Source of the DNA: Octopus bimaculoides
Taxonomy: Eukaryota
DNA: 45,051 nt
NCBI RefSeq assembly: GCF_001194135.2
Contig: NC_068992.1
Span: 9,060,930-9,105,980 of the forward strand
Direction of reading: 5' to 3'
Each line of letters begins with the position of its first letter. Position 1 is the stretch's first letter. Below, piece after piece: positions 37,264-37,770 of the stretch. A program made the position numbers and the translations under genes. The notes under the pieces are model-generated. The model was not told the DNA's origin, made no database searches, and saw nothing but the letters and a program-made list of their open reading frames with translations.

Positions 37264-37770
37264 TATAGGAAAGTGGTTATATAGCTCAGCGGGCTGCGTG
37301 TTTGAATCACGTCGGAGGGTCACCACTTTATAGGAATGCGTTATCAGTTATATAGAAATAGTTGTTATTGTAGCTCAGCGGGCTGCGTGTCTGAATCACG
37401 TCGGAGGGTCACCACTTTATAGGAAAGTGGGTTATACATCATTAGATGTACACCTGACTTTCCTATATTAAATTAAGAATTGAACGGAACGCTGAACTCC
37501 AAACTATCAACATAACAACATTTATTCAAGGTGGAAAATATACATCTTTTATCTTGTTTGTTGAGACGTCTTCGGTGTGTGAGAACATGTATGTTGTGAC
37601 GTTGGTATATTGATGTGAGCTGTCTAGCGTGAGTTCGAACGATGGAGAGACAGCTAGACACGTCCTTGCTCAATCGCTGGCCAGCAAGAAAGAAACAGAA
37701 TGAAGCGGGAAAGCTTGGGTGTTGAATTCCACGCATGCGTGAGACTACGCATGCGCACGGCGTTACTACA
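37264..37770 (-). mobile_element. LTR retrotransposon remnant (Gypsy-like, tRNA-Trp primed): one ~353-bp LTR plus duplicated PBS units
   Basis: 4-bp TSD CATC at 37260-63 and 37771-74. Minus-strand termini TGTAG..CTATA. AATAAA on minus at 37521-26. PBS-like TGGTGACCC(TC)CGACGTGAT begins 3 nt after the LTR end, and occurs twice. Confidence 0.8.

What the first reader, a model, noticed from the sequence alone, without database searches (positions are those of the whole stretch)
37264..37770. TSD-flanked LTR insert with one full LTR, no internal region and a reiterated LTR-end/PBS module
Seen, reading the minus strand: TSD, then TGTAG.. ~353-bp LTR ..CTATA (37770-37418), AAG, PBS, short spacer, ..TTCCTATA, AAG, second PBS, ..ACCACTTTCCTATA, TSD (CATC both sides). 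The 55-bp units 37282-37336 and 37371-37425 differ at one base, period 89. Known: solo LTRs from LTR-LTR recombination lack the PBS, and TRIMs carry two full LTRs. This element fits neither. Inference: either an aberrant reverse-transcription product that still had integrase-competent ends, or a minimal non-autonomous family whose right end is only an ~18-bp att site.
Basis: partly seen in the sequence, partly recalled or inferred. Interest (0 to 1): 0.75.

Follow-up and report, generated by a model that had tools for sequence, protein, structure and literature searches.

The report
One-LTR insert with copied primer tRNA
A young 507-bp retrotransposon insertion in a gene intron has one long terminal repeat followed by two DNA copies of the 3' half of its tRNA-Trp primer; it is most likely a dead-on-arrival product of a reverse-transcription error already known from retroviruses, not a new kind of element.

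Summary
Read on the minus strand it runs: GATG, a 353-bp LTR (TGTAG...CCTATA), AAG, a 43-44-nt block, two degenerate U5-end copies, AAG, the same block again, the last 18 nt of U5, GATG.

The new result is that the "PBS" is not 18 nt long. Each block is the complement of the 3' 41 nt of tRNA-Trp, including CCA, down to the anticodon loop. That is the mark of plus-strand synthesis reading through the primer tRNA, an error documented in defective HIV proviruses.

The insert keeps its CpGs (O/E 1.14, against 0.11-0.18 in the flanks), so it is young and foreign.

Best explanation: one aberrant retrotransposition event. Read-through blocked the second strand transfer, the polymerase switched repeatedly back to a TATAAC site near the U5 end, and integrase then inserted a one-LTR DNA.

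Open points: both tRNA blocks share departures from canonical tRNA-Trp, and the two middle U5 copies are much more diverged than the blocks.

Copy number, the empty site, an autonomous partner and misassembly could not be tested, because no same-species sequence was reachable.

Verdict: a new variant of a known kind, of moderate interest.

The parts
37771..37774 (-). Upstream copy of the target-site duplication (GATG on the minus strand, CATC on the plus strand).
   Evidence: Identical to 37260-37263. The identity extends to 6 nt (TAGATG) if the terminal TA of the element is counted.
37418..37770 (-). Single complete LTR, 353 bp, TGTAG...CCTATA. The termini form a 6/8 imperfect inverted repeat. 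U3 carries two CGCATGCGT motifs (37755-37747, 37739-37731), a TATA-like stretch (37552-37537) and AATAAA (37526-37521).
   Evidence: The 3' end is fixed by the adjacent AAG plus tRNA complement. CpG O/E is 1.12 against 0.11-0.18 in the flanks. There is no other copy in the window. The U3/R/U5 signals are read from the sequence only and are not tested.
37418..37467 (-). Hairpin at the U5 end (TATAGGAAAGT ... ACTTTCCTATA). The TATAAC re-initiation site lies just 5' of its 3' arm.
   Evidence: Inverted repeat (76% over 50 nt). The fold of 37371-37500 has z = -4.9.
37415..37417 (-). AAG, the 3-nt spacer between the U5 end and the primer-binding site (first copy).
37371..37414 (-). Module B, the extended PBS. 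It is the complement of tRNA-Trp positions 76 to 36 (CCA, acceptor strand, T arm, variable loop, 3' strand of the anticodon stem, two anticodon-loop bases). It has a 2-nt insertion, and its last base (37371) does not match position 35.
   Evidence: Aligned to the documented complement of human tRNA-Trp plus CCA (PMC6379413). About 33-34 of 41 positions are identical with one 2-nt gap, and 0 of 2000 shuffles reach the score.
37351..37370 (-). Copy 2', a degenerate copy of the last ~20 nt of U5 (CAATAACAACTATTTCTATA). It is not followed by AAG or a PBS.
   Evidence: alignment. It starts at (A)ATAAC and ends in TCTATA.
37329..37350 (-). Copy 2, a degenerate copy of the U5 end (TAACTGATAACGCATTCCTATA), followed by AAG and a PBS.
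37326..37328 (-). AAG spacer (second copy).
37282..37325 (-). Module A, the second copy of the tRNA-Trp complement. It has the same end points and the same 2-nt insertion as module B, and differs from it at one base (T-loop position 55).
37264..37281 (-). Copy 1, the last 18 nt of U5 (TATAACCACTTTCCTATA). It differs from the LTR end by one missing C and forms the right terminus of the insert.
   Evidence: (family D6).
37260..37263 (-). Downstream copy of the target-site duplication (GATG on the minus strand, CATC on the plus strand).

Best explanation
The insert is a dead-on-arrival product of a single aberrant retrotransposition by a tRNA-Trp-primed LTR retrotransposon. It lies antisense in an intron of a DDHD-type phospholipase gene of an AT-rich, SINE-rich animal genome, probably an octopus.

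Shown:
- One LTR is followed, 3 nt later, by a DNA copy of the primer tRNA. The copy runs from CCA to the anticodon loop, far beyond the normal 18-nt stop.
- The copy occurs twice with identical end points.
- Each time the sequence then resumes at the same TATAAC site, 17-27 nt from the U5 end.
- The insert ends exactly at the U5 terminus.
- It is flanked by a 4-bp duplication.
- It is young, because its CpGs are intact.

Inferred mechanism:
1. Plus-strand strong-stop synthesis read through the tRNA still attached to the minus-strand DNA.
2. The non-complementary tail blocked the normal second strand transfer.
3. The 3' end switched template by 1-2-nt microhomology (..CTA / TA-TAAC) back onto the U5 end of minus-strand DNA. 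That DNA was either the same molecule or that of the co-packaged RNA.
4. It re-copied U5 end, AAG and tRNA, and switched again.
5. It ran off at the U5 terminus once the tRNA had been removed.
6. The product carried a U3 terminus on the left and a U5 terminus on the right. The element's integrase inserted it with a 4-bp staggered cut.

Sub-hypothesis: the primer was a defective or hypomodified tRNA-Trp variant. That would explain both the read-through and the oddities the two copies share. The insert cannot transpose again.
For: Structure and coordinates.

tRNA-Trp identity: the match covers positions 76 to 36 and includes the non-encoded CCA. The CCA shows derivation from a mature tRNA by reverse transcription.

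Published precedent: defective HIV-1 proviruses carry 7-54 nt of primer tRNA exactly at a deletion junction, explained as deferred second-strand transfer (PMC12657518). Read-through past positions 58 and 54 makes the plus strand non-complementary after transfer (PMC8599865).

Right terminus: it equals the U5 end that the two internal U5/AAG/PBS junctions define independently. The left terminus starts with TG, and both are flanked by CATC.

Age: CpG O/E is 1.14 in the insert, against 0.11-0.18 in the 2-kb flanks and a window median of 0.23. The modules are 54/55 identical. A recent, single-step origin therefore fits better than slow genomic remodelling.

All four U5-end copies start at (T/A)ATAAC, which suggests a repeated acceptor site.
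Against: Both tRNA modules share the same departures from the documented human tRNA-Trp. These are a TC insertion inside the first 18 nt and changes at positions 38, 43, 44, 47, 56 and 57. The modules are therefore not two independent copies of a canonical tRNA. Either the primer was a variant, or the extension was already inherited in the parent element, or one module was copied from the other.

The two middle U5-end copies are only about 65-75% like the LTR end, while the neighbouring modules are 98% identical. Simple re-copying of one template does not predict this.

The model needs a minus strand that ends at the U3 border, or repair of a looped heteroduplex. Neither is shown.

The LTR ends in TA, not the usual CA.

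This is a single locus. Copy number, the empty site and read support are all untested.
Confidence: 0.5

Rival explanations
1. Post-integration remodelling. A normal or internally deleted two-LTR element, whose leader already carried an extended tRNA-Trp complement, inserted here. Genomic deletion between microhomologies then removed everything from the tRNA block to 18 nt before the end of the 3' LTR. Replication slippage or end-joining with templated filler then duplicated the U5-end/PBS module.
For: The shared, non-canonical features of the two tRNA blocks fit an inherited, already mutated leader. The junctions show only 1-2-nt microhomology, as in end-joining. The degenerate middle copies resemble templated filler.
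Against: The insert shows almost no decay (CpG O/E 1.14, modules 54/55 identical), which leaves little time for several independent genomic rearrangements. The deletion would have to end by chance just inside the last 18 nt and preserve the exact U5 terminus. The breakpoints fall exactly at the end of the tRNA-derived stretch, as in reverse-transcription products.
Confidence: 0.2
2. A member of a multi-copy non-autonomous family whose standard structure is one LTR plus reiterated U5-end/PBS modules and a short right-hand att site.
For: The termini look integrase-competent and a TSD is present. The shared oddities of the tRNA blocks would be expected of a family consensus.
Against: A one-LTR element cannot produce an R-U5...U3-R RNA. 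It therefore cannot regenerate itself by the established LTR replication scheme. There is no second copy in 45 kb. Exact-match scans of the viral and metagenome collections found no related sequence, although these collections probably lack this host.
Confidence: 0.1
3. Capture of retrotransposon cDNA (strong-stop DNA with the primer tRNA copied) at a chromosomal double-strand break by end-joining, without integrase. The CATC repeat would be a coincidence.
For: Strong-stop-type cDNA is the kind of fragment that break repair could capture (my own knowledge of yeast Ty1 cDNA capture, not checked here). The 4-bp repeat plus a TG start has a chance probability of a few percent when the left boundary is left free.
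Against: Both ends coincide with LTR termini. The right end is the exact U5 end, defined independently by the internal junctions. Capture by end-joining predicts arbitrary end points and no TSD.
Confidence: 0.08
4. An assembly artefact, or chance similarity, creates the reiteration.
For: The window is a gapped draft scaffold with five N runs.
Against: There is no gap within 20 kb. The repeat units are shorter than ordinary reads. They are separated by unique, diverged spacers and differ at one base. The similarity to tRNA-Trp is far above chance.
Confidence: 0.05

Closest known systems
Defective HIV-1 proviruses with tRNA-Lys3 inserts from deferred (aberrant) second-strand transfer (PMC12657518)
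   Same: The order is LTR, PBS, then a contiguous further copy of the primer tRNA. Inserts there are 7-54 nt beyond the PBS; here about 23-25 nt. The tRNA stretch ends exactly at a junction to a distant part of the element.
   Different: Here the acceptor site is the last 17-27 nt of U5, so no internal region and no second LTR remain. The U5-end/tRNA module is reiterated. The primer is tRNA-Trp. The host is an invertebrate and the copy is fixed in a germline assembly.
Solo LTR from LTR-LTR recombination
   Same: A single LTR flanked by a short target-site duplication.
   Different: A solo LTR has no PBS and no tRNA-derived sequence. This insert has 154 bp of them to the right of the LTR.
TRIMs, including tandem TRIMs and the tRNA-bearing Helenus group (PMC10886601)
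   Same: It is small and non-coding, has LTR-type termini, and has a PBS complementary to a tRNA 3' end. Animal Helenus also make 4-bp TSDs.
   Different: TRIMs have two full terminal repeats with a PBS and a PPT between them. Helenus carries a sense tRNA-like sequence with A and B boxes inside the LTR. Here the tRNA piece is antisense, starts at CCA, sits at the PBS position, and there is no PPT or second LTR.
Tailless tRNA retropseudogenes made by LINE machinery (PMC5322556)
   Same: [quoted passage not shown]
   Different: Those are stand-alone insertions made by target-primed reverse transcription. Here the tRNA copy is joined, at the exact priming distance, to an LTR end.

Membership tests
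LTR retrotransposon (any superfamily) | A PBS complementary to the 3' end of a tRNA, within a few nt of the LTR's 3' end. | tested here: met
   TGGTGACCC... begins 3 nt after ...CCTATA, twice. It aligns to the tRNA-Trp complement including CCA.
LTR retrotransposon (any superfamily) | A short (4-6 bp) target-site duplication. | tested here: met
   CATC at 37260-37263 and 37771-37774. It could also be read as 5 or 6 bp. No empty site was available to confirm it.
LTR retrotransposon (any superfamily) | LTR termini TG...CA in an inverted repeat. | tested here: inconclusive
   The termini are TGTAGTAA... and ...TTCCTATA, a 6/8 inverted repeat that starts with TG but ends in TA instead of CA.
LTR retrotransposon (any superfamily) | Two LTRs flanking an internal region with a PPT (and gag/pol if autonomous). 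| tested here: not met
   There is only one 353-bp LTR, and only the last 18 nt of a second one. There is no PPT and no coding region. The 116-aa ORF across the LTR has no Pfam hit and no homologues.
LTR retrotransposon (any superfamily) | Other genomic copies of the LTR, or an autonomous partner. | not testable with these tools
   None in the window. No same-species sequence is in the collections.
Solo LTR | An LTR alone between the TSD copies, with no PBS or internal sequence. | tested here: not met
   154 bp of PBS/tRNA-derived and U5-end repeats lie between the LTR and the right TSD.
TRIM / Helenus | Two terminal direct repeats enclosing a PBS and a PPT. For Helenus, also a sense tRNA-like sequence with A and B boxes inside the LTR. 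| tested here: not met
   One full repeat only, and no PPT. ARAGORN and Rfam find no tRNA. The tRNA piece is an antisense 3' part outside the LTR. Definition taken from PMC10886601.
Read-through / deferred plus-strand-transfer products of retroelements | Primer-tRNA sequence continuing colinearly beyond the 18-nt PBS, ending at a junction with distant element sequence. | tested here: met
   The copy covers tRNA positions 76 to 36. It is then joined to a U5-end copy, twice. Definition from PMC12657518.
Read-through / deferred plus-strand-transfer products of retroelements | The tRNA insert matches the host's actual primer tRNA. | not testable with these tools
   The host's tRNA-Trp is not available. 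Against human tRNA-Trp there are about 7 substitutions and a 2-nt insertion, shared by both modules. The variant 3' end was not found in metagenome contigs or in papers.

The most novel reading that the evidence does not exclude
One-LTR, strong-stop-type DNAs that carry a copied primer tRNA may be a recurrent class of integrase-mediated insertions in this genome. They might be triggered by a defective tRNA-Trp isodecoder or by a 3' tRNA half acting as primer. In the extreme case they would form a propagating family that needs only one LTR and an 18-bp right end.
Probability: 0.1. Interest if true: 0.7.

Novelty: new variant of a known kind. Interest (0 to 1): 0.4.

Why it matters
If the reading is right, this locus is a germline fossil of a specific failure of reverse transcription: read-through of the primer tRNA, followed by failed second strand transfer. 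That failure has so far been documented mainly in cell-culture systems and in HIV reservoirs.

It would show that such products can keep both att ends and be integrated in an invertebrate.

It would also record where the reverse transcriptase stopped on the tRNA, namely in the anticodon loop.

On the practical side, it warns annotators that "LTR plus tRNA-like" fragments need not be solo LTRs, TRIMs or tRNA pseudogenes.

It has no evident function for the host beyond placing a CpG-rich, promoter-like LTR antisense in a DDHD phospholipase intron.

Tried and rejected
1. ARAGORN and Rfam (gathering threshold, and E<=10 on 37200-37850) find no tRNA. The piece is only a 3' part, so the result is uninformative. 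It does exclude a complete tRNA or SINE head.

2. Self-BLAST of 37200-37850 against the window found no other LTR copy and no paralogous empty site. The nearby SINE 3' end (37177-37213) stops 50 bp before the insert, and the flanks are unique.

3. I translated the LTR ORF and searched the 5.8-billion-protein collection, hoping to reach other LTR copies. There were no hits.

4. I searched exon 1 of the host gene to reach an orthologous intron and test for the empty site. The best hit was only 73% identical over the WWE domain, so no same-genus sequence is available.

5. Exact scans all returned 0 hits: the PBS end in viral contigs, the PBS/U5 junction in metagenome contigs and the variant tRNA 3' end in metagenome contigs.

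6. Literature string searches for the variant tRNA end and for the SINE motif found nothing. An octopus LTR/PBS literature search found nothing relevant.

7. I considered the plus strand as a tRNA-like or Helenus-type element (AAAGTGG...CCACTTT as an acceptor stem). I rejected it because 10 nt separate the T stem from that "acceptor", there is no anticodon arm, and there is no tRNA call.

8. I considered a 9-bp U5/tRNA-tail pairing seen in the fold as evidence for a selected leader structure. I rejected it as expected by chance.

9. A 12/13 match between the flank (37230-37242) and the copy-1 junction is probably chance, at about 0.15 after multiple testing.

Full report
CONTEXT. The window is AT-rich (about 35% G+C) and full of microsatellites, SINE-like repeats and assembly gaps. 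It has no tRNA or Rfam family at gathering threshold. Its plus strand carries exons of a phospholipase with WWE_2 and DDHD domains (Pfam). The nearest database relatives are named phospholipase DDHD1. A SINE motif that I recalled from octopus genomes occurs exactly at 22729-22749, so the host is probably an octopus. That rests on memory, not on a database. The finding lies in the intron between the exons at about 33.7 kb and 42.1 kb, antisense to the gene.

OBSERVATION. On the minus strand the order is:
- GATG (37774-37771)
- a 353-bp LTR, TGTAGTAACG...CCACTTTCCTATA (37770-37418)
- AAG
- a 44-mer, TGGTGACCCTCCGACGTGATTCAGACACGCAGCCCGCTGAGCTA (37414-37371)
- CAATAACAACTATTTCTATA (37370-37351)
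- TAACTGATAACGCATTCCTATA (37350-37329)
- AAG
- the same 44-mer with one difference (37325-37282)
- TATAACCACTTTCCTATA (37281-37264)
- GATG (37263-37260)

The 55-nt units are 54/55 identical at period 89. With gaps the repeat reaches 81-85 nt at 89%. The PBS/U5 junction 27-mer occurs twice, against 0 expected. No assembly gap lies within 20 kb.

WHAT THE "PBS" REALLY IS. A paper on engineered tRNAs prints the complement of human tRNA-Trp (chr17.trna39) with CCA (PMC6379413). Each 44-mer aligns to its first 41 nt, that is tRNA positions 76 back to 36. This spans CCA, the discriminator, the 3' acceptor strand, the whole T arm, the variable loop, the 3' strand of the anticodon stem and two loop bases. 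About 33-34 of 41 positions are identical, with one 2-nt insertion. None of 2000 shuffles comes near the score, and these two sites are the best matches in the window.

CCA is added after transcription, so the block derives from a mature tRNA by reverse transcription. It sits 3 nt from an LTR end, in the orientation of a primer-binding site.

A normal plus-strand strong-stop DNA copies only 18 nt, up to m1A58. Synthesis continues into the tRNA when the stops at positions 58 and 54 fail, and the product is then non-complementary after transfer (PMC8599865). Defective HIV-1 proviruses with 7-54 nt of tRNA-Lys3 at a deletion junction have been collected and explained as deferred second-strand transfer (PMC12657518). 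The present insert carries that same signature.

THE "SPACER" AND THE RIGHT END. Alignment of the four stretches that end in ..CTATA shows that the spacer is two degenerate copies of the U5 end. All four copies begin at (T/A)ATAAC, which lies 17-27 nt from the U5 terminus and just 5' of the 3' arm of a strong U5 hairpin (37418-37467; fold z = -4.9). Each tRNA block therefore ends at the same tRNA position, and the sequence resumes at the same U5 site with only 1-2 nt of microhomology. The insert ends exactly where U5 ends, as the two internal U5/AAG/PBS junctions define independently. The left end starts with TG, and the two termini form a 6/8 inverted repeat.

AGE. The insert has 26 CpGs, O/E 1.14. 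The 2-kb flanks have O/E 0.11 and 0.18, and the window median for 507-bp windows is 0.23. The insert is therefore foreign to its surroundings and has undergone almost no CpG decay. This agrees with the 54/55 identity of the modules.

MECHANISM (inferred). A tRNA-Trp-primed LTR retrotransposon made minus-strand DNA normally.
1. Plus-strand synthesis from the PPT copied U3-R-U5-AAG.
2. It then read through the attached primer into the anticodon loop.
3. The tail prevented the normal second transfer.
4. The 3' end switched back onto the U5 end of minus-strand DNA. That DNA was the same molecule or the one from the co-packaged RNA, which could explain the diverged middle copies.
5. It copied U5 end, AAG and tRNA again, switched once more, and ran off at the U5 terminus.
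6. The product had a U3 end and a U5 end. Integrase inserted it with a 4-bp duplication.

The structure, the tRNA identity, the coincident end points, the TSD and the youth of the insert are shown. The order of events, the nature of the templates and how the second strand was completed are inferred.

WHAT DOES NOT FIT.
(a) Both modules share all their departures from human tRNA-Trp: the TC insertion within the first 18 nt and the changes at positions 38, 43, 44, 47, 56 and 57. Because the insert is young, these departures predate it. The primer may have been a variant, perhaps a defective and hypomodified tRNA-Trp. That would also explain why the m1A58 stop failed. Alternatively the extension was inherited from the parent element, or one module was copied from the other.
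(b) The middle U5 copies are much more diverged than the modules.
(c) The LTR ends in TA rather than CA.
(d) The duplication can be read as 4, 5 or 6 bp.

RIVALS. The alternatives considered are:
- post-integration deletion plus slippage of a longer element (0.2)
- a multi-copy one-LTR family (0.1), which is hard to reconcile with the need for an R-U5...U3-R RNA
- integrase-independent capture of cDNA at a break (0.08), contradicted by the exact LTR termini
- misassembly or chance (0.05)

COMPARISON WITH KNOWN KINDS.
- It is not a solo LTR, because it has a PBS and tRNA sequence.
- It is not a TRIM or a Helenus element, because it has one repeat, no PPT, and an antisense tRNA piece at the PBS position.
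- It is not a tailless tRNA retropseudogene.
- It works like the read-through, deferred-transfer products described for HIV-1. It differs in that the acceptor site lies within the last 27 nt of U5, so only one LTR remains, and in that the module is reiterated.
- No evidence assigns it to Gypsy, BEL or Copia.

LIMITS. No sequence from the same or a closely related species could be reached. Copy number, an autonomous partner, the empty site, the host tRNA-Trp and read support therefore all remain untested.

VERDICT. This is a new variant of a known kind, of moderate interest (0.4).

Noticed in passing
window 23457-24182, 26750-27085, 31633-31830, 33594-33797, 42087-42275, 43261-43662 (+): Exons of a WWE_2 + DDHD phospholipase gene. 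Pfam hits support the first, fifth and sixth intervals; I identified the other three by eye from conserved motifs. The best database relatives are named phospholipase DDHD1, but the closest is only 73% identical, so this species is not in the protein collection. The insert lies antisense in one of its introns.
   Followed up: partly
window 13966-14193, 22393-22620, 33855-34082, 44790-44926; and 26522-26733, 27742-27941, 28202-28414, 34657-34870, 36349-36497, 38311-38447: Two families of SINE-like repeats, with several copies each at 70-96% identity. A motif recalled from octopus SINEs matches exactly at 22729-22749 and with one mismatch at 1855-1875, which suggests an octopus host.
   Followed up: partly
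window 37177-37213: The truncated 3' end of a SINE copy (..GAAGACAGACATTAAATGAT) lies next to an (AT)n/(CA)n microsatellite block (37040-37170), 50 bp from the insert. The 50 bp in between are unique.
   Followed up: yes
window 37230-37242 vs 37271-37283 (minus strand): The flank 13-mer TATACAACCACTT is 12/13 identical to TATATAACCACTT at the tRNA/copy-1 junction. A rough estimate gives about 0.15 probability by chance after multiple testing. If real, the target might share homology with the U5 end.
   Followed up: partly
window 37731-37756 (minus strand): Two CGCATGCGT palindrome-like motifs lie 16 nt apart (start to start) at the start of the LTR. By eye they resemble NRF1-type sites. Together with a TATA-like stretch (37537-37552) and AATAAA (37521-37526), they suggest an intact LTR promoter pointing antisense to the host gene.
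   Followed up: no
window 17392-17766 (-): A 125-aa open frame that looked to me like a fragment of a non-LTR retrotransposon reverse transcriptase. It has no Pfam hit at E<=0.01.
   Followed up: partly
window 2841-2850, 3786-4205, 4845-5331, 14618-14726, 17010-17019: Runs of N (assembly gaps), mostly inside trinucleotide (ATG/ATC)n and dinucleotide repeat blocks. The long "ORFs" at 3.6-5.5 kb are artefacts of these repeats.
   Followed up: yes
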